Shown: positions 1,805 through 28,906, numbered from the whole stretch's first letter. The stretch is DNA of 63,019 bases, filler included, from Guillardia theta CCMP2712 (GCF_000315625.1; 4 parts of 4 records of this genome joined end to end with filler, not necessarily neighbours in it), one strand, 5' to 3'. Made by a program: numbers and translations. The notes: generated by a model from the letters alone, not told the origin.

Positions 1805-2071
1805 TGATGGTTGATACATTAAACAGAAGTAGAGATGTTGATTGTACAGTAATCGCTTCATTCAGTACAAGTAGAGTGATGCAGTACAGTGATGACGTTT
1901 GGTGCAATGGCCCTGCCATGGAAGTTTGTGGTTTGAAATATTGTGAAACAATAAAATTGACAAAAAACTAAAGGAAAAGTATTGAACCTACTTCGAATCC
2001 TACTTAGATCCCATTCTACTTATATTTTTTCCTCCTTGTTTGCTCCGGTTTGCCTTTCCCTGCGGTGCATC

Positions 2072-4237
2072 ATGCAGCAAGAACACGTTGCGTCGAACAA
2101 GCGCAAGAGACGGCGAGAGACGGGGGAGGAGCGAGCAAAGGTTGAGGTTGAGGAGGAGGCCCCACAAGCAAGTGGTCAACGGGAGGCCCACCAAGACCAT
2201 TTTGTAGAGTTGGATCAGCTACTTTGCGAGAAGCAGAAGCAGCTTCCCAAGAGGAACAAGGATCCGCATCGCAAGGAGGAGGGGGAGGAGGGGGACGAAG
2301 ATCTTCGCAAGGAGAAGGAGAAGCTGCGCAAGAAGGAGGAGGAGCTTCGCAAGAAGGAGGAGCAGCTTCACAAGGAGAAGGAGGAGCAGCTTCGCGAGAA
2401 GGCGGAGGAGCTTCGCAAGAAGGAGGAGCAGCTGCGCAAGAAGGAGGAGGAGCTTCGCAAAGAGGAGGAGCTGCGCAAGGAGAAGGAGGAGCAGCTTCGC
2501 AAAAAGGAGGAGGAGCTTCGCAAGAAGGAGGAGGAGCAGCTTCGCAAAAAGGAGGAGCAGCTTCGCAAGAAGGAGAAGCTTCGCAAGAAGAGGGAGCAGC
2601 TTCGCAAGGAGAAGGAGGAGGAGCTTCGCAAGAAGGAGGAGGCCCAGCTCCGCAAGGAGAACCTGGTTTTGAGGCAGATTCCGTCATCTGTAGAGCGAGG
2701 GATGGCTTGGGAGGAGTCAGAGGCGGGGCTTGATCGCATGGGCTTTTGCGAGCAGAGAAAGTGCTTCCGCCTCGATGGCTCGTACTTATCGATGGATGCA
2801 AGCCATGTCAGCAACCAGGAGCTTTTTCTCTACTGCCGAGAAGCCTTCACGAAGCAGCAGAGCTTCCTGAGAGAGCGAGTGCTGGAGCAAGGCGCTCTGG
2901 GCTGGATCCAAGGGCCGCCAGGAACAGGGAAGACGACTACAACGCTAGCGTTCTGCCTGTCGCTGGACATGAAAGAGTGGATGGTGACTTTTCTCAGGCT
3001 GAAGCCTATACACATCTACTGCATGCAAGTGGTGGACGGGAGGAGAAGATTTTGCAAGATCTTGTATAGCTCTGCAGCAGAGGGGTTAAGGGAGGCTTTT
3101 GCAGGGCGCGAGGGCAAGAAGCATGTGGTAGTGCTAGATGGTTTCCTGAGACAGCAAGAAACTCATCAAGGCGTGTATCGGGAGTGTCTGGTATGGCGTG
3201 ATGCAGACCAGCAACATCGACGGCTGGCTGTGGTAACATCGATGTCATCTCGGGGGAAGGCGTACATAGAGTGGGATCAAGAAATGAAGCTTGAGACGCA
3301 TAAGGTTGTTTCCTGGACGCTCGATGAGTACCTGCAGGCGGTGCAGCACGACGAGCTGTATGAGCAAGTGAAGCCCTTCTTAGAGATGGATGTGGAGGTA
3401 GAATGGATGCTAATCACGACATGGGATGGGCAAGAGACGAGAGAGGAGCGGGTCGTAAGGAAGTACTATCTCGCCGGGGGCTCATGTCGGTTCATGTTCC
3501 AGACAACCGTGGCCAATGTGAAAGAGGCATTGGACGACGCCATTGAGAGTGGTGCGAACCTGGAGACCGTCCTCCAGGGCAACGTAGGAGAGTTTTCGCC
3601 GCAAGCCATCAACCGGTTGATAGCATACGTCGAGTTTGGAAGTAAGAGAAGCTGGTTGCCAGTGAGCAAGTATGTTGCAAGTACGCTTGCGGCGCGTACT
3701 GCAGAATCGACTTTGAGGCAGTTGGCTCTCAGTTATGGCATTGGAAATCCGGGCGTGAAGGGAAGTCTTTTCGAGATGCTTTTCTTCAAGAAGATGGAAC
3801 AAACAGGGTTGAGTGTGACTTACCGTGGCCCGAGGCAGACCGAGAGCTGGGATCGATGTCTTGTGGTGAATTTCTCATCATTGCAAGGCATCAAGACGCT
3901 TCCTGCGCAAAATACGTGCTTGAGGCCCATTAGCGCGTTTCAGGGAGGCTATGACGCAGTGATGGTCGACCAAGAGAAGCGCAAGGTGATGTTTGTACAA
4001 GCAACGATCGCACAGAAACACTCTTTCAAACTCTCGTTCTTCCTGAAGGCTCTGAAAGCGCTTAACATCCCGGAAGGTGGGAGGTGGAAGGTGGAGGTTG
4101 TTTTCCTGATTCCGGTTGAGGAGCTTGCAAGGTTTGAGATCAAACCCATCGAAGACAGCGGGGCGCTAAAGGATTACGGATGGAAGAGAGGAGAGGAGGA
4201 AATGCAAGCAGAAGTAGCAGGGATTTCTATCTTGTAG
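2072..4237 (+). CDS. Crinkler/RHS-type (CR) protein: coiled-coil repeats + P-loop NTPase + C-terminal restriction-endonuclease-fold domain
   Basis: Intronless ORF with first ATG at 2072. It has an NLS-like KRKRRRE, EEELRKK repeats (~2290-2660), Walker A GPPGTGKTT, Walker B VVVLDG and YYLAGGSCRFMF. The C-terminal GSLFEML...QGGYDAVMV...VMFVQATIAQKH matches the E/D/QxT pattern of CR-REase domains. Confidence 0.75.
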   Translation: MQQEHVASNKRKRRRETGEERAKVEVEEEAPQASGQREAHQDHFVELDQLLCEKQKQLPKRNKDPHRKEEGEEGDEDLRKEKEKLRKKEEELRKKEEQLHKEKEEQLREKAEELRKKEEQLRKKEEELRKEEELRKEKEEQLRKKEEELRKKEEEQLRKKEEQLRKKEKLRKKREQLRKEKEEELRKKEEAQLRKENLVLRQIPSSVERGMAWEESEAGLDRMGFCEQRKCFRLDGSYLSMDASHVSNQELFLYCREAFTKQQSFLRERVLEQGALGWIQGPPGTGKTTTTLAFCLSLDMKEWMVTFLRLKPIHIYCMQVVDGRRRFCKILYSSAAEGLREAFAGREGKKHVVVLDGFLRQQETHQGVYRECLVWRDADQQHRRLAVVTSMSSRGKAYIEWDQEMKLETHKVVSWTLDEYLQAVQHDELYEQVKPFLEMDVEVEWMLITTWDGQETREERVVRKYYLAGGSCRFMFQTTVANVKEALDDAIESGANLETVLQGNVGEFSPQAINRLIAYVEFGSKRSWLPVSKYVASTLAARTAESTLRQLALSYGIGNPGVKGSLFEMLFFKKMEQTGLSVTYRGPRQTESWDRCLVVNFSSLQGIKTLPAQNTCLRPISAFQGGYDAVMVDQEKRKVMFVQATIAQKHSFKLSFFLKALKALNIPEGGRWKVEVVFLIPVEELARFEIKPIEDSGALKDYGWKRGEEEMQAEVAGISIL

Positions 4238-6030: not shown

Positions 6031-8069
6031 ATGTCTGATCAAGGTTCTACCGTCGTTTCTTGATTGAGATATAACAAATCCTTCAGGGACCGTTGGAGTG
6101 TCAAAGAAAGAAAAAGTGAAGCAATATCTGGAAGCATCGATTCTTCCCTTTCTTTCCCAGGCACTCACAAAACTTTGTGCTGAAGTAACTTCAACCATCT
6201 TGTTCCACTTGATGTGATGAGAGACACAGGAGCCGTCCGACCCTTTCGAGTGGCTGGGCCGCTACCTGATCGAAAACAATCCGCGCGCCACTCGAAAGTT
6301 CGATCACAAAGAAGCATTGGTGAAGCTGTGCTTGAAGAATCAACTCTTGACTCTTTCTAGGTCTTGAAATTGGCTCAAGGAGATTTCTTCGGCGAGATAG
6401 CGTTGCTGCATGGAAAACCGAGACAAGCTACTGTGAAGGTCAGACAGTTGCAAACGAACACCCAAGAGTACTTTCATCTCGTCGTTGATACTGCTCATAG
6501 TCTGTTGGATCATCTACTCTTTTGGTTCTTTCTCGCGATGCTTTCAACCGCCTTTGCGGAAGTCTCTTCGACATTCTGCAAAGAAATATTGTGATACTCA
6601 TTCAATAGAGTGGATGCTGTTCTGAATGACGCACAGGGAGAGTACAAGGATGTGGAGTTTATGGAAGAGGAGCCGGAGGAGCATCTGGACGTGAGAGACT
6701 CTTGGCTCCCTGTGGCCTCCAACCTCCCACACAGGACTACGGCGGAGTCTCGGAGGAAGAAGATTATGAGGAGCCCCCGCCGCCTCCCGTCAACATGCGG
6801 AGGTTTCAAGCGAATGCATGGCGATGCCTTGTTGGTTGAAATGCTTTGAAGGGGAAGAAGAGATACCGTCTACTTGGCCGCGACTAAGGCAGGCTTCTTA
6901 CCTTGCTGACCTCATGCCTCACACTCAGCCAGGTTGAGGATGATTGGAGACCTCCGGAATTTCCCAAGACGGACGAGGAACGTGATAGAATACACAAAGT
7001 GAGATCAATTTGCAAGGATGGACAAGGCTCTTCTGTCTCAACTGAGCTGGTTTTTAGTACATTGAAAAAACGGCTTTGCTGTCCTACCTCGATCCATCCT
7101 CCAAAGACTTGGTCAATCTTTCTTTCTCCTCTCACTTGCATGACATCAGTTTGTGCAGGTTGTCACAGCGGTGGAAAAGCTAGAATTCGATGACGGGCAA
7201 GACATCATTAGTCAAGGAGATGAAGGTATGTCAAGGCTCTGCTTTGGCTGCCGGCTGACTCAATCTCTTGCCAGCTGATTATTATTACATCTTGGACTCC
7301 GGCAAGGCAGATGTATGTTCTCTCGCTGACGTTTGCTCCTGCTCGCTCATTCATGTCAAGGTTTTGATCGCAAAGCCGTTGGGCTCCGACCCTGTCAAGG
7401 TCAACGAGTATGGGCCAGGTGCTGCCTTTGTGGTCGCCTGGTGCCATGCTGGTGATGTGCTAGCAGGAGGTTCCTTCGGCGAGCTTGCGCTGCTCCATGG
7501 CGATAAGCGAATCGCCACCATCCGCGCCACTGAGGTCCTTAAAACTGCCCCAGGCTTAGCCTCTGATTGCTCGCGTGATCAGCACTGTGTGACGTGGGCC
7601 TTGCAACGTGACACCTTCAGAAAACTGATGATGCAGAGGTTTGAGGAGCAGCGATTGAGAGCGTTGTTGGTATCTGATTCGGACCTGCAGTGGAAAGCAA
7701 GCCTTGAACGAGAGGGTTCAGTTCCTCTCCAAGGTTTTCTTCTTCACCGCGAGCGAAGCCTGGTGATCTTATTGCAGGTGAACATCTTGAAGGAACTGGA
7801 CCACTATGAGAAGTTCAAGATAGCAGAAGCCATGCAGGTAGACGTCAACAAACACGTTGTACAAAGTGATGTAAACGATGCAGATGAGAAAGGTGGAGGA
7901 TGACGAGGTCATTGTGAAGGTGCTGTGAGTTTAGCTCGTACCTCGTTTGTCTCACGGAGGTTGACATCAGGAGGGAGAACCAGGCAGCGAGTTCTTCATC
8001 ATTCAGAGTGGAGAATGCCACGTTTACAAGCAGGTGCTAGTTGATGTCACTCAATGCTTGCTCAAGTAG
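6031..8069 (+). CDS. cAMP-dependent protein kinase regulatory subunit-like protein with Dpy-30-type docking domain and circularly permuted CNB-B (about 19 exons)
   Basis: In-frame spliced model. Dpy-30 motif VKQYLEASILPFLSQALTKLCAEEPSDPFEWLGRYLIENNP; then FFGEIALLHGKPRQATVK...FNRLCGSLFDILQRNIGEY; inhibitor site RRGRRDTVY; full CNB-A with SFGELALLHGDKRIATIRA. It ends with VNILKELDHYEKFKIAEAM...EGEPGSEFFIIQSGECHVYKQ and a stop at 8067-8069. Confidence 0.85.
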
Positions 8070-14400: not shown

Positions 14401-16937
14401 GGGACGGGAGGAAGGGAGATGGGGAAGGGAGGAGGAGCAGGAGTAAGGAGAAGGGTGGAGGATTCACGTCTGCTGTAGCGATGATACGTCCTTCTTGATC
14501 GCTTCGATCTCCTCGTTCTGTAAGGCGTTAGAGCCTCTTCCCGTCCTCTCTCCTCCTTCACCTTCTCGACCACATACTGCGCGACGATCTTCTGAAGAGC
14601 TTTGAACTTCTTTGCCTGCAAATCCTGGAAACTTTCCAGCTCTTTGAAAGCTGATTGAACCTGGAATTGCACAGTCATCATAGAACTGCACTCCCGTCAT
14701 GATATCCCAGTAATCGATTATCACGACCAACATCTACATCATCGCAGTATAGTATGTAAAGTTTCACTCACATAGTCTCTGATCTCAACGAGATGCGACG
14801 TCGCCAGCTCCTTGTTCTGATGCTCCACCTGCCAAGACCGTCAAGAGGGCTGGGAGGAATGAGGAGTAAGCGAGGTGGACAAGGAAAGGACTTTACGTTT
14901 GACTTGCGCGAGAGTTTAGCAAACAAGCCTCCAAGGTCGCTGTGCATCTCCCAGGAGGTTCGGAGGAGAGAAGTTCCCTGAGGTGATGGCATGAGTTGGA
15001 AGGAAGAGGATTACGAGGAGTGGGAAGAGTCGAGAGGAAGACGTGGAGGAGGAGGCAAAGGGAGGGAAGGTTTGTTGACCTGCTCGTAAAGCTCTTCTCC
15101 TGTCTTCTTGTGCGTCTCCAGCACGAATGTCGTGTCATCCAACTTGCCACGAGTTTCCTGGGCTCCACCATCATCCCCTCCCTCCTTGAGCTCCTCGCGC
15201 TCACCTTGAGATCGTTCTTGGTCTCACTCAGACTTGTCTTGGTCTCACTCAGCTCGTTCTTGGTGACCTTGAGCTCTTGCTCCTTGTGCTCGAGCTTCCC
15301 GCAGGCCTCGTTGAACGACTCCTGCATCTCTTCCAGCTGCTTCGACCTCTCCTCAATCTCCTGCTGCAGCACAAGCTCGTTCTGCGATAGCATGAGCAGG
15401 GGGATGGGGTGTAGGGAGGGGGATATGGAGGGGTCATGCCTGCTTGAGTCGCTCAATCTCCGTGTGCATCTCCTCGTACTTCTGGGAGGAGAGGTAAACT
15501 CCGTTCGCCTCGCGCTGAGCCTTCAGCTGCAGGATTTGTGAGGAGAGGAAACAAGACGATGCAAGGAAGCATTGCACAGAATCAGAGGAAGAAACAGAAA
15601 GGGATGCAGGACAAGGAAAAAAGGAAGGGGGGAAAGAGAGGTAAAGAAGGGCAGGAAACGTCGGAGATGTGGAGGATGGAGGACCTGCTCCTGCAGGTCG
15701 GCGATGTTTCGCGCCATGTCTCGCATCATGGTCTTCTTGGTCTGCACTTGGTTGATCTCTGGTGTGTTCTTGATGTTCTTCGCCCTGCAGGCGTAGTCGA
15801 GCGTGCCTGCACAGATCGGGGGAGGTCAGGCGAGCAGGGGAGAGACAGGCAGAGGGGAAAGTCACCGAGAGCAGGAGAGGAGGGGGCAGAGAGGAGGAGG
15901 AGGAGGAGGAGGAGGAGCGGAGAGTCACCGAGAGTCTCTTCGATGTTGCCAGAGGTCGGGGAGACGGTGGCGATGATGAGGGTCTTGGTCTTCCCTCCGA
16001 GAGAGTCTTGAAGCAGGCGGGTCAGCTTGCTCTCCCTGTACGGTACGTGCGGCTGATGCTCCACCAACGCTGTGATGACTCGCCCGAGCGTGAGGAGGGA
16101 CTGGTTGATCTGCCCGGCCTCCTTCTTCCTGTCTCCCAGTGCTCCGCTCCTTCCGACGCACTCGCTGCCTGCAAGATCGACGAGGTTCAGTTGGCCGGTC
16201 TTGATAACCTCCTCCTCATCGAGGGTCTTTTCCTTCATAAAGATCTTGAGAGTGAAGATCTGGTGAGAGCGGGAGGACTGCTTGTTGCACAGCGTCTCTG
16301 CGGTATGGCGCTGCTTGTTTGTCCCCTCGAGGATTGAGAAGATGTCAGCAGCGGACTTGACGGCTCTCTCCTCCACTCCTTGTAGCACCACTCCCTTCTT
16401 CGGGTCCTCCATCAGCCTCAGCTTGCGCAGTTGGCCCGTGCAGTGATCGTCGGTGGATGCGATCAGGTCGGACAGCTCTTCGTTGTATAGCTCCACCACA
16501 GAGATACGAACTTGATACTCGAAGTCGTTCTCCTCAAGGTACTTGAACACATGCGCTACAGCTCGAGGAACAACGCCTGCTCCTGGAGGCATCACGCTGC
16601 CACAGTTGTTGACCTCGCCCTCCATGGTGTAAGTCTTGCCTGTTCCGGTCTGACCGTATGCGAAGACCGTGCAGTTGTAGCCTTGAAGCACTTCGTCTAC
16701 AACTGGCTTCACCACGTGCTCAAACACATCCTTCTGCGACGATGACTGATCGTACACGCCATCGAACATGAACGCTTTCTTCGACGCCTTTCCAAGGGAC
16801 GCGTAGGAGACTTCTACTGTTTTCTCATTGAGGCATCGCAGAGCCTGCTTCTCCTTTGCCGCCTCCGACGGCGTCATTGGGCGACATCTCAGCACAACTT
16901 TGACGTTCTGACCCTTACCTTCTTCTGTGTTCGACAT
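11444..16937 (-). CDS. Kinesin-5 (BimC/Eg5 family)
   Basis: N-terminal motor (GYNCTVFAYGQTGTGKTYTMEG, NKQSSRSH, LNLVDLAGSE, HVPYRESKLTRLLQDSLGGKTKT), LKAQREANGVYL neck, coiled-coil stalk, BimC box LPTGQTPMKK (~12090-12120). Confidence 0.92.
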
Positions 16938-18406
16938 GTTTGATACCTGAAACAGGGTCACGGGAGGAAAAACAGTCAAGCCTAGTAGATATGATTCTAT
17001 CAAGGTATAATTCTATCAGACTGTGACAAGCTGGTATGGACTTTCATGGGAGCTCTTGATAAAGCAAAAAAATAATGGGATAGCAAGAATGGATGTATGC
17101 AAACTACAAGGAATCACAGTCTGAATTTCCACTCAACATGCAAGATCTAAGGGATGAACGAAAGAGATGTCAAGGTGCGTGTAACGCGATGTGGGGACAA
17201 CATTGACATCAGAAGGAGAAAGAAGAGGAAGTGATGGAGGACGAGGACGAGGACGAGGACGAGGATAAGAAGGTGCTGGAAGCATGATGCCAACGAAGGG
17301 ATTGAGCATCAGCGGGAACGAAGGCGTGTACCGATTTGAAAATTGAAAAATCAACGGAACCACGATTTTCCAAAAACAGTAATAAAAATACGTTACGTTG
17401 TCGTTATAATACCATGATAAACTGAGTGACTCGACTCCCGGCGACTCACACACGGCCCGGTGACATTCCGATCAGTACGGTCATCATCGGCTGATGATCA
17501 CAAGTGCCGCAGTGCCTCGGAGGTCATAGTACCGTACCGTATACTAGTGTGACTATGATCACGCCGGGTGATATCAGTCCGGTGCGCGGCAGCACTGTGC
17601 AGTCACAGAGTGCATTTCAAGAGTCAAATTTCCGAGGCTGACTCGGCGGTCACCGTCGGGCGGCGAGAGCGAGCCCTGGGCCTGACCGGGAGTGCTCCCA
17701 CACGCCTCAGTTCTCAAAGTCAGCCTGGCAGGTTAGGGTACTTCCAGAGACCAGCCGCCGCGCGCCTCAGTTTTAACTTAACTTTGAGTAAAGAAGTTAA
17801 CAGGCCGGGCTTTTTCAAGTTTTTTATATGGCCGGGCCGGGAGATTTTGAACCCGGCCGGCGGGCCGGGAGTTTTTTTTGAGTGAACCCGGGCCCGGGGG
17901 CCGGCGGGGCCGCATAAATGGCCGCGGCCAGGCTGAACGTAAAAGTGATGATACGACTGAGGCGTATCGTGAAATTCATAAGAACAAAAAAAAATATATA
18001 ATCTGTACCTAAACAGTGTCATAAAATAGTTTTAAACTTCCAATATCTATTTTAGTATTCCTAAAACCAATTTATGATATTATATATAAATGAAAAAGAG
18101 TTTTATGAATTGCCCAGTGGTCTGATTTGCTCCGTCCGATCATGGCTTCATTCTTCCTCTAAGTTAAGTTCCTCTCCTCTCCTCCTTCTCGACCGAGCAA
18201 GAAGCTCATTGCTTGAGACCCTCTACACACTCTTCTCCTCTCCTCCTCCTCTCGTCTGCCTAGTGCTTGCTCCCCTCTCAACGGCGAGCCACTCACCTGA
18301 ATCTCTCCTTGCCTATTTGTTCACTGCCTACATAGTCAAACTCACCGAACATCCCTCAAGCGCAGACCAAAGCCTGAACAGTGCAATTCAAGAGTAACTT
18401 ACACCG

Positions 18407-21353: not shown

Positions 21354-23250
21354 ATGGCGGATAGGATACACACTCCTCAGTGGCTGCTTGCTGGAGCAGC
21401 GAGGATGCTGTTGATCGTGTACGGCATGTGGCAGGACGAGAGCATGGCGGTCAAGTATACGGACGCAGACTACCAGGTGTTCTCTGACGCTGCCAGGATG
21501 ATGGCGATGGGAGGTGAGTGGTGGACGGGTGGCGGCTGGCGCGTGATGATGGAAAATGCAAGATTCTCCCTTTGAGCGCGCGACGTACCGCTACTCGCCC
21601 TCCATCGCCATGCTGCTGCTGCCCAACGTGTGGGTGGGGAAGTTGTGGGGGAAGCTGCTGTTTGCGAGCACGGACCTGCTGGTGGGATGTCTTCTTGCCA
21701 GGTGAGCTCTGAGTGAGCGCTGAGACCGGAGCTGAAGGAGCCAACAAGGATCCTGATGGCGCAGAAGACAGACAAGCAGCAGCTCGCATTCCTGGTCAAC
21801 CTCTGGATCCTAAACCCGATCGTCGTCAACGTGTCTACTCGAGGCAACGCTGAAGCTCTCGTGAGCCTCGTCGTCATGGCCACGATCTTAGCGGTGGTTC
21901 AAGACCGACCGGTGAGGAGGAGAAGAGGCAAGCCAAGAGGAAGCAGAAGGAGAGGAGAGGAGCAGCAGAGGAGAGGAGAGGAAGAGTAGAGGAGAGAAGG
22001 ATCGCTGAAGTCTCTCACCTGTTGGATGTCTTGCTCACGTTTCTGACGTCTGATGTTCTCAGGTCCTAGCTGGGCTTTTCCTGGGGCTTGCCGTGCACGT
22101 CAAAGTCTATCCGATCATCTACTCGCTTCCGCTCTACTTGTCATTCTGCCGGGAGATCAGGCGCGTCTCCTTCTTCTCCGACTTCTTCAACAAGCGCAGG
22201 TCCTTTCTGCTCGCCTATTTTCCGTCCTCATCCTCCTGAAGCCTTCAGTTCGCCTTCTCTGCAATCCTCTCCTTCTCGGTCCTCACCGGCGCTTTCTTCG
22301 TCATGTACGGCCATCGCTTCCTCCACGAGGTCTTCTTCGCGCTCTCTTCCTCCTCTCAGCTCTGCTGTCGCAGGCGTACATCTACCATGTCTTCCGCGTC
22401 GACCACAGGCACAACTTCTCCCTCTACTTCTACCAGATGTATGCCACTTCACCCAGCTCCACTCCAGCTGAAGCCTTGTGGCAGGTACTTGTCCATGGAT
22501 ACCTCTGCTCGGCTCGTCGGTCTCGTCGCCTTCGCCCCTCAGGTCCAGCAGACGCTCAGCGCGGCAGCAGCTCATGTGCGGCAGGTTGTCATCCTGATAG
22601 CCATCTCGCTGAGGTACGGAAGGAGGAACAAGATCGGCCTGTAAGTCTCGCCCGTGCGCCTACCCCAGCTCAGCCCCAGCTGTAGTTGCATCTGCTGCCA
22701 AACTATCGCCTTCGTCGCCTTCAACAAGGTCTTCACCGTCCAGTACCTTGTCTGGTGCCCTCGCCCTGTCCAGCTGCTTCCCATGACCGCCTGACACAGG
22801 TATTTCGCGCTGCTGCCCCTCGCGTTTGCCTCGGGCTTCCGGGTTGGCTACAGGTCAGGATAGGGAAAGAGGGAGGAGGAAAGAGGAGATGAGAAGTTTG
22901 CGGGCAGGATGCACCTGGTAACTACTTCTCTGCTGGTGGGTGGGATGGGCATGTGGCTGGGGTTCGCGTACCAGCTGGAGTTTCTTGGGAAGCCGGTGAA
23001 ACTAGCGAGCTTATAACCAGCAATGTTTGACAAACCTGACAGATGTGGTTGACACTCGTAACGGCAAGCGCTCTCATGTTTGCAGGTGAAGAGAAGTGGA
23101 GAGCAGAGCAGAGCAGAGCAGAGCAGAGCAGAGCAGAGCAGAGCAGAGCAGACGGGTACAGCGGAACAAGAAGAGAGGAGGGATTCAGAGGTAGGACGGG
23201 GAGGAGAGCTGGGTATGTGAACCAAGAGTGGCAAAGGGTGGAAAGGATAA
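21354..23250 (+). CDS. PIGM: GPI mannosyltransferase I (3' end approximate)
   Basis: [86 protein letters not shown]. Confidence 0.92.
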
Positions 23251-23522
23251 GAGAAGAGCTCAGACAGGATGGAGTGAGGAGAGGAGTCGAGGAAGATGTG
23301 CAGGAAAGGAACAGAGGGGAGGAGTCGGCGGATGATGCAAGCCTACAGGTCACATGAGCTTGTTTTGCTCTCTCATCTTGAACGATGCGAGAGGAGAGGA
23401 GGAGGAGGAGAGGAGGAGAACCAAGTGAACGTGGGTACAACTCAAGATCAGCAGCACCTCTTCCTTGCGCCTGTCTTTACTCTCACTCGCCTTCCTCCTC
23501 GCCTTGCCGTATGCTACATCCT

Positions 23523-26500
23523 CTAGGGCATCGGAGGGTTGCCAGCGTCTGCCGAGCCCATGAGCCACCTGTTCCCGAGCGTGTCGGGCCCGGAGTACTC
23601 AAGGATTAACGTATCCCCCCCACCGTTGAACCACCACCGGACCTGCAGCTTCTGCTCCCCTGCCGCCAGGTACACCGAGGAGCATTTCTCTCTTGCCGTC
23701 CATCCCCCCGTGCTACTGATCTCTAGCTTGTCGTTGACGTACAAGAAGCCGTTGTAGTCGTTGGTCAGGCACAGGTTGTAGTTACCCGCCTGCTTGATCG
23801 TGTGCTTCCCGTAGAAGCGGAAAACGGCGTTGGTGCTGCTGTAGCTGGAGAAGAAGTGCTTCAGGTCCTCGTCCTTCTTGAAGTCCAGAGCAGGCGCATG
23901 CCCCTCCCCGAGGTAGGTCAGCTTGTCGTTCTTCATGCTGTCTTCGTCGCTGTGGCAATACCAGTCAGCAGCGTCAATTGAAGGGAAGAGAGAAGAATAA
24001 GAGATGGGAGGGCAGGGGAGAAGGACGAGAAGAGGGTTAAGAGAGCGACAAGGAAAGAGCGGGAGGGGGGTCACCTGAGCATCGTGGAGCGGCACTGCCA
24101 CTCCCTGATGAGCCATACAGACTGAGTCGAGTCCTCAGGAGTAACCGGGCTGTCACTGCGAAGCCTCATCTTCAGCATGCCGGTGTCAGGACCGCTGAAG
24201 GTGACGAGGATGGAGACAGTGCTGCTGTCTGTTACCAGCACCACCTTCACGTTGTGAGCTCCCGCCCCAAGCCTGACGATGCCACAGCTCTCTTGCTTGC
24301 CGGCGTGATCACCCAGGGTCACGGCATCTTTGTCGTCGATGTACAGGTAGACGATGTTGTGGGACTCGAGGCAGAAGTTGTAGTCGCCTTCTCTGACAAC
24401 CTGGAGGTTGCCGTAAAAGTAGACAGCCATCTTGTCGGAAGGGATTTTGGTGTTTGAGGGCAGTGCGTTCTTGATCTCGGTCTGAGAGTTGAAATCGATG
24501 GCCTTCACCACGGCGCTGCCGACCATGTTCATCACCTTCTTGCGCGGCTCGCCGTTGATGTCGACGTTCTGCGTGTACACCTGCATCGTCCACTGCGACA
24601 TCGTCGGGGGTGCGGGGGCCGCGGGGTTGGAGGAAGGGATCGCGAGCTTTTCATCCCCAGTGTCCACACCGTAATATTGGGCCTTGAACGTCACCGAATA
24701 ACTGTTGGAGTGGAAGTAGACCACCTTGACCTGATGGCTGCCCTTGGTGAGCTTGACCAGAGAACACTTCTCCTGCTCGTTGTGATCACCGTCGTTGTTG
24801 ACAACCGTCTTGCCATCGATGTAGAGGTACGAGCCCTGAGCTGATGTGGTGCAAAAACCATACTCGCCCTCATTCTCGATGTTCACTTCCCCAAAGCATT
24901 GCAGGAGGAAGTTGTTGTTGGGTAAGCCGGGCATCCTCGATTTCATGGCATCAAAGTTGGCGAAGTTGATGAAGGGGACTACATACTGACCGACGGAAGA
25001 TAGCATGGAAGGAGATTCCAAATGAACCAATTTGCTGTCAGAGGAGTACGCCCGGACAGTCCACTTGGAGGGCGGGACAGTGATGACCTGGACAGAGTCC
25101 ATCTTGTTGGACCAGCTGTACTTGCTGAGCTTTGGGATCTCATTAGGACCGTAGAAGTAGATGGAAGAGCCCTTGTAGTCTTCATTAGAGAACATCTTCA
25201 CGGCCAGTCCTTCGGGGATGCTAAGGGAGTCAACAGTGCCCTTCTTCAGGTTGCATGGCTTAACTTCACACAGGGCCTTGTCGTTGTCGCAAAGGTCTTC
25301 GTTCAACTTGGGGTATTCTCCTGCGATCAGCATTGCCTTGTCTCCAGTGAAGTCATTGCCAGAGTAGAACACCGCCATGTTTCCGACTGACGGGCATGCA
25401 GGAGGGATCTGACCCTCCTCTCTCATATCCTGAACCGTCGAGGGCGGAGGAATCACAACCTTGACAGGCGCGTGGTCGGGCATAAACTTCTTGCAGAGAA
25501 AAGGAAAGTTGTCCGTACACTTTTCGTCTCGAATGTACAAGTTCGAACTGTAATACTTGGTCTGAGCCGCACAGAACTTGTCCGTTGACGCTGAGCTGGA
25601 AGGATGTCCTGGCTTCCATCGTTGCAGAGCATAGTTGGGCTTTTCGCCGTCCAGGAACAACCAGGATCCTCTTACTTTTCTCATATTAATCCAAAATGGT
25701 TCGTCATCGCCCATGATCGTCTACACGCAGCCATCAGCACAAGAGACATCAACATGATCTGTTCAACGGCGCAACAAACTCACCCTGCCAAGGTCGAGCT
25801 CCGACCTGTCCTCATAGCTGAACAACTCTCCTCCCCACAGCTTGCAAGTCTCTTGCGCCTCCTGGAATGACCTCGCCGAGTACTTGTTCGAGTAGCAAGC
25901 TTTGCCGTCGGTGGCAAAGGGGAGATATGAACCCGTAGGACACTGGCGGGTAGCAGCCTGCAAACGAGTCATGGAAGAGGCAAGAAAAGTCTTGACCCAC
26001 CGAGCGAACAGGCTCGCCATCACAACAGACACCCAATTCTCCGCTGTTGCTGCAGGAGTCCTTATTCCACTTGGCATAGCACGTGGTGATCGATTGCTGC
26101 ACAGCTCTCACACAACCATCCCCACCACAGACTCAAGGATTAACCTCGTCACCGTTACAAGCTACGTTAGTCATCCAGATCTTGTCAACGCTGCCACTTC
26201 GACGCTGGTATGACTCCATCTTGTTGAAGCCGAGCTCCTTGCACACCTTTTCTTCGGTTAGTATGGATCGACACAACATGCACACCATACAATGCTCGCA
26301 GTCGTTTGAGACATTCCGTCAGCACAGATGCTGCCCCACTGGTCCATGTGCTTCACTTGCACCAGACATGATCCTCCAGTGCACTGCCGCCAGCCATGAG
26401 CTTGTGACATCCGCAACATGGGCCGTTCACCTCAGTCAGGCGGAGGTAGCTGGTGGGGACGCCGGATGGGCAGCGATTGCGACCGGGGAGTCCACGAGGT

Positions 26501-27524
26501 CCCTCGGGGCCTTCAATCCCGTCGGGCCCTCGCTGTCACTCAGTCAGAACATTCCGAGTGATCGATCGAGATGAGTCTACCGGCCCTTCCGGCCCGGGAA
26601 ATCCCTTGGGCCCCATGCCTCCTTCTGGCCCCACAGGCCCTTCAGGCCCTGCAAGTCTCTCAGTGAGCTCGCCTCGCCCTCGTCCTCCTCAGCTTTCACC
26701 TTGCGGTCCGCGAGGCCCCGGCGCTCCTTTGAGGGAGGCACTCAACCTATCGAGAAGTCAGAAACAAACCCAGAGGCAGGCAAGCAGGTGGAGGAGGCAG
26801 GGAGGGCAGGTAGCGGAGGCCGGCAGGGTCGCAAGCCTACCGTTGCTGGATAGTTACAGTTCGCTTCAAGTTCTGAAGGTGCCTGACCTGCAAGGTTCGT
26901 GTCATTCAAGTCTGTGACCAACAGCGAGAAAAGGCCTCACCGTGCCTTCCAGCCGGGCCACCCGGTTCCGGAGGGCAATCCACTTGGACCAAACCTCCTG
27001 CTCTTCCTTGGTATGGCAGCAGCTGCATACCAGATGAGTAGGAGAGAACTCGAGGCCCAGCTCGTTTACCCGATGGGCTTGTCGTCGAAGTAATCCTCAC
27101 CGTTGAACGCGGGGATCTGGTTGCTCGTCATTCACACACGCGAGCGGATCTCAATGAGGTACCTCTGGGCAATCGCTACCGTCAGAGCCGCAGAGTTTGT
27201 CTTGCGCTGGTTCGTCATCGTCCGAATTCCATCCAGGTCCTGCGATCCAACGGTGAGCCTGGAGTCAAGACGCAAGGCTCCTGCCTGTCGGCCATTCGTT
27301 GGGATCCTCGTAGACATTGTTGGTGTCAGGATTCCATACGCGCTGGAAAGGAGCTACTTCCGAATGCGGAGCAGTGTACAGGACGCTCTTTTCAGCACTC
27401 TAGTTGACCAGAAGATGTCAGGAGGGAGCAACGAGGCGACAGATCAGACCTCGTTGAGGATCAATGCAGCAACCACGATCACAGCGAGCAAAGAACCGAC
27501 CACGGCACTCTTCTTCGCAGTCAT
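23523..27524 (-). CDS. Mosaic surface protein: N-terminal TM/signal anchor, coiled coil, collagen (Gly-X-Y)17, SRCR, C-type lectin, beta/gamma-crystallin, 3x PA14 (start approximate)
   Basis: TM SAVVGSLLAVIVVAALIL; collagen [51 protein letters not shown] (~26727-26477); SRCR VQVKHMDQWGSICADG...VCKELGF...IWMTNVACNGDEQSITTC...GVCC; CTLD CY...SFQEAQETCKLWGGELFS...FWINM...WKPGHP...FLCK; crystallin SLSIPEGLAVKMFSNEDYKG...WSNKMDSVQV; PA14 GEYGFCTTSAQGSYLYIDGKTVVNNDGDH. Confidence 0.82.
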
Positions 27525-28906
27525 GGTTGTTTCTCTGGCTGTCAGCGACCCGCCCATGATCAACCAAGCGCGTGGCGGCTCCTGGGCTTTGCTGGCCTGC
27601 GGAGCCACAACAATCAAACCATGTTCTCTGTGTGCTTGAAGTTGGAGCCATCGAGTGAGAGAAATCGATGGGCACCCTCTTTCGACTGTATCCTTCCATC
27701 CCATCGCATTCAGTCATTCAGATCTACAAATGTCTACTTGCTCTCTCTGTCTTTGTCACGATTCTCAACGCTTTCATTCTATCTGAACCATCAGCTGCAT
27801 AATTTCTTAGTTCATCTCCATAACATCCAAAATCTCCATCGTCTATTTATAACATTCTTAGTGCTCTCCTGACCTTTCTGTAATCTCCTCGCACTCCACT
27901 GTTCCCCTAACAAGGTTCACCTTGTTTCTTCACTTCCTCCTCCTCTCTATTTCTTACAAATTCTCGTCCTCCTCCTCGTCCTCCTCCTCCTCCTCCTCCT
28001 CCTCCTCCTCCTCCTCCTCCTCCTCCTCCTCCTCCTCCTCCTCCTCCTCCTCCTCCTCCTCCTCCTCCTCCTCCTCCTCCTCCTCCTCCTCCTCCCATCC
28101 TCTATCTCTTCATTTTGCGAACGAAGAGCCACCAGTACCCCCACCCCATCGTATCCCCAAGTTTTCCACTACCGGCTTCACCAACACCCTACTTGCTCTT
28201 ACTACCCTATGTATACCCCTCTAGACCCCACTTTATCATAATAAAGTACCCCACGACTCGACCTATGTACCCCACCCCCATAAGAATGAAGGCAGAACCC
28301 CTCCTGTAATATGTAAATTACAGGGTGGGGTACAATGTGATAAAACCGTGAATCGGGTGACATGGCAGCGTTGCAGGAATGAACAGCAGGAGCAGGAGCA
28401 GGAGCAGGAGTAAGAGCAGGGGGGAGAGAGGAAGGAGGAGGAGGAGGAGGAGGAGGATCAGTATGAGTGGTACGAGAAGATGATGCAGAAAGGGAACACA
28501 ACATGAGATGTGTGGAATAAGATGCAACAGAGGTAGTCGCTGGAGCACGGGGATCAAGAGCAGTGAAAGTAGATGAGAAAAGCAGCAACAGGAGCAAACG
28601 ACTTGAGGAAAACCAGTAGCGGAGCGAGGGATTGAGGCAAAGCGATCAACAAGCAGAGTGAGAAGCAGGAGACGAGAAAGAGGATAACAAGGAGGCTTTG
28701 TTGAAGTCTTCAGTCGCAGTGTCAAAAACTTTGCTGATGGATTGTCAATCCTTCAGGCTGGTCGCGTGTACTTATACGGCATCTCACCCCTGTTGCTCGG
28801 CTCATTCCTCTCTCCTCCCGGAACGTCTTGCCGTGTCAGTGAGTGAGGAGATTTGCAAGAGAAGGCAGGCATGACCCCCTAGCGCTCGAGGATTGAGGGC
28901 GACAAG

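What the first reader, a model, noticed from the sequence alone, without database searches (positions are those of the whole stretch)
23523..27524. Class-A scavenger receptor/collectin-like architecture in an apparent unicellular alga
Seen in sequence, mostly hidden in short exons missed by the ORF track: N-terminal TM anchor, heptad-like stretch (WIALRNRVARLEGTVRHLQNLKR), 17 uninterrupted Gly-X-Y triplets across three exons, an SRCR domain, a C-type lectin domain, a beta/gamma-crystallin domain and three PA14 domains. Established knowledge: type-II TM + coiled coil + collagen + SRCR defines vertebrate SR-A1/MARCO/SCARA5, and collagen + CTLD defines collectins/CL-P1. SRCR and CTLD domains are known in green algae, but I am not aware of this collagen-trimerised arrangement there. 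Inference: a convergently assembled trimeric, multivalent glycan/microbe-recognition receptor, possibly for prey capture, pathogen sensing or cell-surface assembly.
Basis: partly seen in the sequence, partly recalled or inferred. Interest (0 to 1): 0.8.

Follow-up and report, generated by a model that had tools for sequence, protein, structure and literature searches.

The report
Collagen-stalked scavenger-receptor-like protein of cryptophytes
One expressed 15-exon gene of the cryptophyte alga Guillardia theta encodes a surface protein built like an animal class A scavenger receptor or collectin (membrane anchor, coiled coil, 17 collagen triplets, SRCR, C-type lectin-like domain) plus a crystallin and three PA14 domains; the family is conserved in cryptophytes and has not been studied.

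Summary
RNA-derived contigs join 15 minus-strand exons (27704/27524 to 23523) across 14 GT-AG/GC-AG introns of 43-125 nt. From Met61 the translation is letter-identical to UniProt A0A7S4P8Y3 (Guillardia theta, 1065 aa). The gene is GUITHDRAFT_121909, annotated only as a hypothetical protein.

Pfam passes its own thresholds for Collagen, SRCR, Lectin_C and three PA14 stretches. The beta/gamma-crystallin domain is supported by Protein S (E 2e-5) and by an orthologue above threshold.

The architecture is a conserved cryptophyte family: Hanusia, Teleaulax, an MMETSP transcript and many metagenome contigs. All copies that cover the collagen stretch have exactly 17 triplets. Gly identity is 100%, against 63% and 46% at X and Y, so a real triple-helical stalk is likely. 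A paralogous type without the lectin domain occurs in Rhodomonas.

The functional reading is only partly supported:
- The lectin domain lacks EPN/WND in every member.
- Guillardia's PA14 domains lack the Asp-Asp motif kept by most orthologues.
- The cytoplasmic tail is about 5 residues.

It is therefore a trimeric, multivalent surface binding protein with an unknown ligand. It resembles class A scavenger receptors but is not shown to be one. No paper was found naming the locus.

The parts
23523..27704 (-). Coding span of the gene GUITHDRAFT_121909: 15 exons, 14 introns. Exons in + coordinates: 23346-23949, 24075-25720, 25784-25956, 26000-26096, 26145-26244, 26289-26383, 26431-26532, 26581-26647, 26699-26744, 26839-26885, 26939-27022, 27070-27116, 27163-27238, 27284-27399, 27450-about 27920.
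   Evidence: Joints in RNA-derived contigs X5 and X6. GT-AG or GC-AG on the minus strand. One ORF of 1125 aa, identical from Met61 to A0A7S4P8Y3.
27522..27524 (-). Probable start codon (Met61 of the longest ORF). In-frame ATGs further upstream at 27704 and 27557.
   Evidence: The UniProt transcript-derived protein starts here. Orthologues P0304, P0057 and P0068 start 3-5 residues before the hydrophobic segment.
27453..27509 (-). N-terminal hydrophobic segment (aa 66-84), preceded by KK. Either a signal anchor (type II) or possibly a signal peptide.
   Evidence: Hydropathy maximum 2.47. Segments of 18-20 residues in orthologues.
27010..27452 (-). Acidic spacer (22 D/E, 6 K/R) with four conserved Cys (C..C and CC) and the conserved motif LYTAPHSEVAPFQRVWNPDTNN. 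Spans 4 exons.
26728..27009 (-). Heptad (coiled-coil) stretch, aa 170-214, about 4 heptads, directly before the collagen stretch.
   Evidence: Heptad register, AF2 helix at 110-138 of P0003 at low confidence, near-invariant in orthologues, weak Surfac_D-trimer hit of 13 bits.
26476..26727 (-). 17 uninterrupted Gly-X-Y triplets (aa 215-265) over three exons.
   Evidence: Pfam Collagen 30.2 bits, above 27.2. 17 triplets in all 8 orthologues that cover it; Gly 100%, X 63%, Y 46% pairwise identity.
26016..26448 (-). SRCR domain (aa about 275-372) over four exons. Six canonical Cys plus an extra Cys pair in the first strand region.
   Evidence: Pfam SRCR E 3.3e-16. PDB SCARA5 9e-15, MSR1 7e-13, MARCO 3e-10.
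25487..25942 (-). C-type lectin-like domain (aa about 383-513), without the EPN/QPD and WND motifs.
   Evidence: Pfam Lectin_C E 1.5e-11. PDB DEC-205 and Endo180 about 1e-10, with an alignment showing HPS and IRD. The same holds in all orthologues.
25046..25438 (-). Beta/gamma-crystallin-type domain (aa about 530-660).
   Evidence: PDB Protein S E 2.2e-5, nitrollin 2e-3. Pfam Crystall 19.9 bits here and 26.2 in orthologue P0187. AF2 pLDDT about 80-90.
23526..25003 (-). Three PA14 domains (aa 675-805, 850-960, 985-1125). The last lies in the final exon after the 125-nt intron.
   Evidence: Pfam PA14 E 2.8e-20, 3 stretches. Internal repeats 24-29% identical. Foldseek hits to the tandem PA14 of RsgI (1.8e-15) and the PA14 of the Marinomonas RTX adhesin (TM 0.62-0.69).

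Best explanation
This is one expressed nuclear gene of Guillardia theta (GUITHDRAFT_121909; UniProt L1I7S4 and A0A7S4P8Y3).

Shown here:
- The 15-exon gene model and the domain order: short N-terminus, one hydrophobic anchor, an acidic Cys-containing spacer, about 4 heptads, 17 Gly-X-Y, SRCR, CTLD, beta/gamma-crystallin, 3 PA14.
- This order is conserved in several cryptophyte genera.

Inferred mechanism:
- The hydrophobic segment acts as a signal anchor, so the rest of the chain is extracellular.
- The coiled coil nucleates three chains, and the 17-triplet stretch zips into a short collagen triple helix. It is rich in Gly-Pro-Arg and charged triplets and has few Y-position prolines, so, as in bacterial collagens, it may not need hydroxyproline.
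- The CC and C..C cysteines just before the coiled coil lock the trimer with disulfides.
- The result is a stalk on the cell surface carrying three copies of a 750-residue head of binding-type domains, that is, a multivalent surface adhesion or recognition protein.

The ligand is unknown and is probably not bound by the classical Ca2+-sugar sites, which are absent from the CTLD and from Guillardia's PA14 domains. With a tail of about 5 residues it is more likely an anchored adhesin or cell-surface (periplast) organiser than a signalling or endocytic receptor.
For: - Single transcript: one X6 contig crosses all 14 introns and X5 contigs agree. Splice sites are canonical. There is a single ORF, and an independent transcript-derived UniProt entry is identical.
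- 3'-tag-like raw RNA reads pile up on the minus-strand 3' end.
- Domains pass Pfam thresholds.
- Full-length orthologues have the same order: P0186, P0187/P0304, P0188/P0307, P0189/P0322 from Teleaulax amphioxeia, and the Hanusia phi C-terminal part.
- The 17 triplets are invariant in number, with Gly 100%, X 63% and Y 46% identity. The heptad stretch and the four Cys are conserved.
- The hydrophobic segment is 18-20 residues long in all copies.
- PA14 and crystallin folds are modelled with pLDDT 70-90 and match carbohydrate-binding PA14 modules.
- The atlas feature search puts the N-terminal half nearest collectins, MARCO, SR-A and collectin-12. Scores are below 0.9, so this is a lead only.
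Against: - No trimer was modelled or measured.
- AF2 confidence for residues 1-466 is below 50.
- No signal-peptide or TM predictor was available, so cleavage and secretion are not excluded.
- The CTLD lacks EPN/WND and Guillardia's PA14 domains lack the Asp-Asp motif, so binding of any ligand is an assumption based on domain types.
- Only one N-glycosylation sequon is present.
- The start codon (Met1, Met50 or Met61) is not settled by the reads.
Confidence: 0.6

Rival explanations
1. Secreted or matrix protein. The N-terminal hydrophobic segment is a cleaved signal peptide, and the trimer is a soluble, collectin-like or structural component of the cryptophyte surface periplast rather than a membrane-anchored receptor.
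For: - The start at Met61 leaves only about 5 residues before the hydrophobic segment. Orthologues begin MARI or MARG followed directly by the hydrophobic stretch, like the n- and h-regions of a signal peptide.
- There is no cytoplasmic motif.
- Cys-rich N-terminal segments ahead of collagen are how soluble collectins oligomerise (established knowledge).
Against: - The hydrophobic stretch is 18-20 residues long in all copies, longer than typical signal-peptide h-regions.
- P0186 and P0307 have longer, Arg-rich N-terminal tails.
- No predictor was run.
Confidence: 0.25
2. The Gly-X-Y stretch is only a flexible, Pro-rich linker. The protein is monomeric, or oligomerised by the coiled coil alone.
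For: 51 residues is short. Only 3 of 17 Y positions are Pro. AF2 gives no structure there, although a monomer model cannot show one.
Against: A linker would tolerate length changes and Gly loss. Here the length is fixed at 17 triplets and every Gly is invariant in 8 sequences, while X and Y vary. The stretch passes the Pfam Collagen threshold. It sits directly after a conserved heptad stretch, as in SR-A and CL-P1.
Confidence: 0.1
3. The architecture is not convergent. A collagen-SRCR (class A scavenger-receptor-like) cassette was acquired from an animal by gene transfer and later extended.
For: The nearest single-domain solved SRCRs are SCARA5, LOXL2 and MSR1. The atlas neighbours are all chordate.
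Against: - Identities are only about 30-35%.
- Cryptophytes have other SRCR proteins (Hanusia P0029).
- In a small SRCR tree the cryptophyte collagen-linked SRCRs (type 1 99/97, type 2 95/90) lie outside the sampled metazoan clade (99/99). That sample had no class A receptor.
- The genes carry cryptophyte-type introns.
Confidence: 0.1
4. Gene-model artefact. Two neighbouring genes (collagen/SRCR and lectin/PA14) are merged by assembly of overlapping transcripts.
For: De Bruijn contigs can merge overlapping transcripts. The same X6 contig does run on into the convergent plus-strand neighbour.
Against: - All 14 introns have the same orientation and keep one frame of 1125 codons.
- An independent transcriptome entry is identical.
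- Orthologues carry the whole architecture in one uninterrupted ORF on genomic and transcript contigs (P0188 on a 16-kb contig, P0186).
Confidence: 0.02

Closest known systems
Vertebrate class A scavenger receptors with SRCR (SR-AI/MSR1, MARCO, SCARA5)
   Same: The same order: N-terminal anchor, spacer, alpha-helical heptads, Gly-X-Y collagenous stretch, then an SRCR with the six group A cysteines directly after the collagen. The SRCR's best single-domain PDB matches are SCARA5 (9e-15), LOXL2 (1.3e-13), MSR1 (7e-13) and MARCO (3e-10). The architecture definition is from PMC3567963.
   Different: - The SRCR is not the C-terminal domain; about 750 more residues follow (CTLD, crystallin, 3 PA14).
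- The cytoplasmic tail is about 5 aa against 30-55.
- The collagen stretch is shorter (17 triplets) and has net charge about -1, so it lacks the Lys cluster that binds polyanions in SR-A.
- There is no RxR motif of the MARCO type.
- There is an extra Cys pair in the first SRCR strand.
- Class A receptors are described only from vertebrates (PMC3567963), and common descent is not shown.
Collectins, especially membrane collectin CL-P1 (COLEC12/SCARA4)
   Same: A collagen stretch combined with a C-type lectin-like domain. In CL-P1 there is also a type II anchor and a coiled coil N-terminal to the collagen. Cysteines lie ahead of the trimerising region, as in soluble collectins. Atlas feature neighbours are collectin-10, -11 and -12 (a lead only).
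   Different: - An SRCR lies between the collagen and the CTLD, and there is no alpha-helical neck directly before the CTLD.
- The CTLD has HPS in place of EPN/QPD and IRD in place of WND, so it is not a classical Ca2+-dependent carbohydrate-recognition domain. Its nearest solved CTLDs are in DEC-205 and Endo180.
PA14-bearing microbial adhesins and glycan sensors (Marinomonas RTX adhesin PA14, clostridial RsgI tandem PA14, yeast Flo/Epa)
   Same: Tandem PA14 folds at the distal end of a long surface protein. Foldseek gives RsgI tandem PA14 at 1.8e-15 and MpPA14 at TM 0.62-0.69.
   Different: The Guillardia and Hanusia copies have AQ, HN/RN and DY/DF where the Asp-Asp (Ca2+/sugar) motif sits. 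Most other cryptophyte orthologues keep SDDGS in PA14a. The equation of this motif with the DcisD motif of Flo5/Epa1 is from memory.
SRCR and CTLD proteins of green algae (Chlamydomonas)
   Same: SRCR and C-type lectin domains in a unicellular alga (my knowledge; mentioned in PMC8226300).
   Different: A collagen/coiled-coil trimerising stalk was not found described there. The present family is from cryptophytes, an unrelated lineage.

Membership tests
Class A scavenger receptor (SR-AI/MARCO/SCARA5) | Type II membrane protein with a cytoplasmic domain of about 30-55 aa and a TM of about 20 aa (PMC3567963) | tested here: inconclusive
   One hydrophobic segment of 18-19 aa preceded by KK. The tail is 5 aa from Met61, the start supported by orthologues and UniProt, or 65 aa from Met1. 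No TM or signal-peptide predictor was available.
Class A scavenger receptor (SR-AI/MARCO/SCARA5) | Alpha-helical coiled-coil region between the TM and the collagenous domain | tested here: met
   About 4 heptads with hydrophobic a/d positions. AF2 helix at 110-138, low pLDDT. Conserved in orthologues.
Class A scavenger receptor (SR-AI/MARCO/SCARA5) | Collagenous Gly-X-Y domain | tested here: met
   17 uninterrupted triplets. Pfam Collagen 30.2 bits, above 27.2. Invariant Gly and invariant length in orthologues.
Class A scavenger receptor (SR-AI/MARCO/SCARA5) | SRCR domain as the C-terminal, last domain | tested here: not met
   The SRCR is present (59.9 bits) and follows the collagen, but it is followed by CTLD, crystallin and three PA14 domains.
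Class A scavenger receptor (SR-AI/MARCO/SCARA5) | Common descent with the vertebrate family | tested here: inconclusive
   In the SRCR tree the cryptophyte domains lie outside the sampled metazoan (DMBT1-like) clade, but no class A receptor sequence was available to include. PDB scores favour SCARA5 only slightly over LOXL2.
Class A scavenger receptor (SR-AI/MARCO/SCARA5) | Binding of polyanionic or modified-lipoprotein ligands | not testable with these tools
   The collagen stretch has 5 K/R and 6 D/E and no Lys cluster. Binding needs an assay.
Collectin / CL-P1 | Collagen-like region plus C-type lectin domain in one chain | tested here: met
   Pfam Collagen and Lectin_C are both above threshold.
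Collectin / CL-P1 | Ca2+-dependent carbohydrate-recognition motifs (EPN or QPD, and WND) | tested here: not met
   Alignment to Endo180 and DEC-205 CTLDs puts HPS at EPN and IRD at WND. All orthologues have G(H/K/S/M)P and NNY(I/V)x(D/N) there, D in all but P0307.
Collectin / CL-P1 | Alpha-helical neck directly joining the collagen to the lectin domain (soluble collectins) | tested here: not met
   The SRCR lies between the collagen and the CTLD, and the heptads are N-terminal to the collagen.
PA14 carbohydrate-binding modules | PA14 fold | tested here: met
   Pfam PA14 E 2.8e-20 in 3 stretches. Foldseek hits to PA14 structures.
PA14 carbohydrate-binding modules | Asp-Asp (DcisD-type) Ca2+/sugar motif | tested here: not met
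   Guillardia has SAQGS, SHNIV and NDYNG. Most orthologues have SDDGS in PA14a and SADGS in PA14b. The placement of the motif is from memory.
Beta/gamma-crystallin superfamily | Match to crystallin profiles or structures | tested here: met
   Protein S E 2.2e-5, nitrollin 2e-3, beta-B1 crystallin 0.1. Pfam Crystall 19.9 bits, below 25, here, but 26.2 in orthologue P0187. Foldseek gamma-B crystallin derivative 3.8e-5.

The most novel reading that the evidence does not exclude
Cryptophytes independently invented a collagen-stalked, trimeric, multivalent surface receptor of the scavenger-receptor/collectin type. It mediates recognition of other cells: bacteria taken up by mixotrophic cryptophytes, pathogens or viruses, mating partners, or the contact through which ciliate predators such as Mesodinium select cryptophyte prey. 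That would be a non-animal origin of 'defence collagen' architecture.
Probability: 0.25. Interest if true: 0.8.

Novelty: new variant of a known kind. Interest (0 to 1): 0.6.

Why it matters
Coiled-coil plus collagen stalks that display SRCR or lectin heads are regarded as an animal, and for class A scavenger receptors a vertebrate, solution for multivalent pattern recognition (PMC3567963).

A conserved, well-expressed family with this layout in cryptophyte algae would show one of two things. Either the design arose more than once, or its parts are far older than animals.

It also gives a concrete candidate for the almost unknown molecular make-up of the cryptophyte cell surface. That surface matters for mixotrophy, for viral attachment, and for prey recognition in the Teleaulax-Mesodinium-Dinophysis food chain.

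The invariant 17-triplet collagen with few Y-position prolines is also a natural test case for hydroxyproline-independent triple helices in a eukaryote.

Tried and rejected
- The first protein search, with the 546-aa exon, could not reach the full-length protein because of the length filter. Searching with the 689-aa Hanusia hit did reach it.
- Paper searches found nothing on this protein or architecture. The terms tried were Guillardia + scavenger receptor; SRCR + C-type lectin + collagen + protist; cryptophyte + collagen-like; the locus and accession ids; and PA14 + cryptophyte terms.
- The one cryptophyte collagen-like paper concerns fibre proteins of polinton-like viruses. It was rejected as irrelevant because this gene has 14 spliceosomal introns and host orthologues.
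- No paralogue lies elsewhere in the window.
- The whole-protein AF2 model was uninformative for residues 1-466 because the alignment is shallow there and the model is a monomer. No trimer prediction is possible with these tools.
- The SRCR tree could not include class A scavenger receptor sequences, since none was available by reference.
- The spliced protein itself was never typed into a tool. All searches used the identical database entry P0003.
- The extra 1245 nt of the X6 contig beyond 23346 was considered as a long 3' UTR and rejected. Its junction is GT-AG on the plus strand, so it belongs to the convergent neighbour.
Full report
**Gene model.** The window's long ORFs in the region lie on the minus strand. 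On their own, exon pieces already gave Pfam hits to PA14, Lectin_C, SRCR and Crystall. Twenty public runs hold the stretch. Several are probably RNA, because they hold about 65-80% of the sampled words.

Laying four runs on 23180-27920 showed 14 joints in the contigs of X5 and X6, and one 4602-nt X6 contig crosses all of them. X2 is DNA-like and colinear with the introns. The raw RNA reads of X24 are 3'-tag-like, with the first mate on the minus strand, and pile up at 23339-23815. After allowing for the ambiguity of the cut, 13 introns are GT-AG and one is GC-AG on the minus strand; lengths are 43-125 nt.

The joined exons give a single ORF of 1125 codons, from ATG 27704 to stop 23525-23523.

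**Identity.**
- The 546-aa exon found a 68%-identical Hanusia phi protein.
- Searching with that protein found UniRef A0A7S4P8Y3_GUITH, 'PA14 domain-containing protein', 1065 aa. It is letter-identical to my model from Met61.
- Its 90% cluster also holds XP_005818890.1 / EKX31910.1 / L1I7S4, 'hypothetical protein GUITHDRAFT_121909 [Guillardia theta CCMP2712]', 1079 aa.
- That genome model differs in the 5' exon and in exons 2-4. The RNA-based version is the one that matches the conserved orthologue motifs.

So the organism is the cryptophyte Guillardia theta. The gene has been in public databases since the genome project, without a function.

**Domains.** On the full protein Pfam gives:
- PA14: 73.1 bits, 3 stretches.
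- SRCR: 59.9 bits (cut-off 26.1).
- Lectin_C: 45.4 bits (cut-off 22.6).
- Collagen: 30.2 bits (cut-off 27.2).
- Crystall: 19.9 bits (below 25).
- Surfac_D-trimer: a weak 13-bit hit on the heptad stretch.

Against solved structures:
- The SRCR's best single-domain matches are SCARA5, LOXL2, MSR1, MARCO and Mac-2BP.
- The CTLD's best matches are DEC-205 and Endo180.
- The crystallin region matches Myxococcus Protein S (2.2e-5) and nitrollin (2e-3).
- The PA14 region matches anthrax protective antigen domain 1 (1.5e-4).

An AF2 model built on a 10-sequence family alignment is confident only from residue about 490 on, that is, for the crystallin and PA14 domains. It predicts a helix over the heptad stretch at low confidence. 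Foldseek matches the confident part to the tandem PA14 of clostridial RsgI, to the sugar-binding PA14 of the Marinomonas RTX adhesin, and to a gamma-crystallin derivative.

**N-terminal region.** Features:
- The only strongly hydrophobic segment is aa 66-84, preceded by KK.
- The spacer is acidic and has four Cys.
- About four heptads directly precede 17 uninterrupted Gly-X-Y triplets.
- 11 of the 17 triplets have Pro at X, only 3 have Pro at Y, and 10 Y positions are charged.

From established knowledge of collagen peptides and bacterial collagens, such a composition can form stable triple helices without hydroxyproline.

**A conserved family.** An exhaustive representative search and a word search found full-architecture relatives that are 40-43% identical over 85-97% of the protein (93-97% for the longest three). 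All carry Collagen, SRCR, Lectin_C and PA14. Named cluster members are Teleaulax amphioxeia (EukProt EP00802), an MMETSP transcript and Hanusia phi. Most others come from metagenome or Logan contigs, one of them as an uninterrupted 1514-codon ORF on a 16-kb contig.

A second type occurs in Rhodomonas abbreviata and in environmental contigs. It has a charged helix, 20-26 triplets, SRCR, crystallin and up to five PA14 domains, but no CTLD.

In the eight type-1 sequences that cover the region:
- The collagen stretch has exactly 17 triplets and no indel.
- Pairwise identity is 100% at Gly, 63% at X and 46% at Y.
- The heptad stretch, the CC and C..C cysteines and a spacer motif are nearly invariant.

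This is the pattern expected of a functional triple helix nucleated by a coiled coil, not of a linker.

**Binding sites.**
- The CTLD aligns HPS to the EPN motif and IRD to WND. Every family member lacks these Ca2+/sugar ligands.
- In PA14a most orthologues have SDDGS. Guillardia and Hanusia have SAQGS. Their PA14b and PA14c likewise lack Asp-Asp.

The classical sugar-binding sites are therefore missing in the Guillardia protein. Its ligand cannot be inferred from domain names.

**Origin.** Cryptophytes have other SRCR proteins, for example Hanusia P0029. In a small SRCR tree, type 1 (99/97) and type 2 (95/90) are each monophyletic and lie outside the sampled metazoan clade (99/99). That sample contains no class A scavenger receptor, so convergence against transfer stays open.

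**Comparison with known families.** The layout parallels class A scavenger receptors as defined by Whelan et al. (PMC3567963) and CL-P1/collectins, but several defining features are not met. The SRCR is not terminal, the tail is very short, the lectin motifs are absent, and there is no neck. I therefore describe it as working like a collagen-stalked surface receptor or adhesin, not as a member of those families.

**Literature.** No paper in the searchable library names the locus or describes this architecture in cryptophytes or other protists.

**Verdict.** The structural interpretation, a trimeric collagen-stalked multidomain surface protein, is well supported by conservation. The functional interpretation (glycan or microbe recognition) is unsupported, and for the classical sites contradicted. 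It is an undescribed, lineage-wide cryptophyte variant of a known architectural kind.

Noticed in passing
window 27163-27720 (exons 1-4); P0185 against P0003: The GenBank/JGI model XP_005818890.1 (1079 aa) uses a different 5' exon and mis-splices exons 2-4. It replaces the conserved VWNPDTNN...CG..G.DCPE segment with unrelated residues. RNA contigs and orthologues support the UniProt A0A7S4P8Y3 version.
   Followed up: partly
window 23053-23348 and 22053-22685 (+): The X6 contig continues past the gene's 3' end through a junction that is GT-AG on the plus strand (intron about 23086-23348). It therefore merges with the transcript of a convergent neighbour, whose ORF has a PIG-M mannosyltransferase hit (E 1.4e-9). 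The two 3' ends overlap.
   Followed up: partly
window 24019 and 26787: In X5 and X6, contigs that cover intron sequence end in 255-nt loose ends whose letters are not found anywhere in the window. They could be intron-retaining forms joined to repeats, or paralogous copies. This is unexplained.
   Followed up: partly
window 27947-28100 and 23080-23170: A long trinucleotide (GGA/TCC-type) repeat lies just upstream of the gene's 5' region. A 15-nt tandem repeat (four or more copies) lies inside the neighbour's intron, downstream of the gene.
   Followed up: no
window 27549: The DNA-like run X2 lacks one G of a GGG run between the upstream in-frame ATGs and Met61. If real, it would break the Met1 and Met50 frames and favour Met61 as the start. 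At depth 3.8 it may be an error.
   Followed up: no
window 15726-17003 (-), 7268-7903 (+), 1982-4237 (+): Other genes in the window: a kinesin motor domain ORF (E 1.8e-105), a weak cyclic-nucleotide-binding hit, and a weak AAA_11 hit.
   Followed up: no
P0191/P0333 (Rhodomonas abbreviata), P0192, P0006, P0153, P0077: A paralogous cryptophyte family: charged helix, 20-26 Gly-X-Y, SRCR, crystallin and up to five PA14 domains, without a CTLD and without a detectable hydrophobic anchor in the available sequences.
   Followed up: partly
runs X16 and X20: Freshwater and lake metagenome runs hold 0.34 and 0.05 of the stretch's sampled words, although Guillardia theta is a marine alga. This could be a close relative, a spike-in or contamination.
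   Followed up: no
L002 2051-6595 (P0188): In an environmental orthologue the genomic ORF reads through an in-frame intron (about 40 codons) exactly before the conserved P(I/L)GCC motif. Intron positions therefore differ between cryptophyte lineages. In most orthologues the heptad, collagen and SRCR parts sit in one exon, against seven exons in Guillardia.
   Followed up: no
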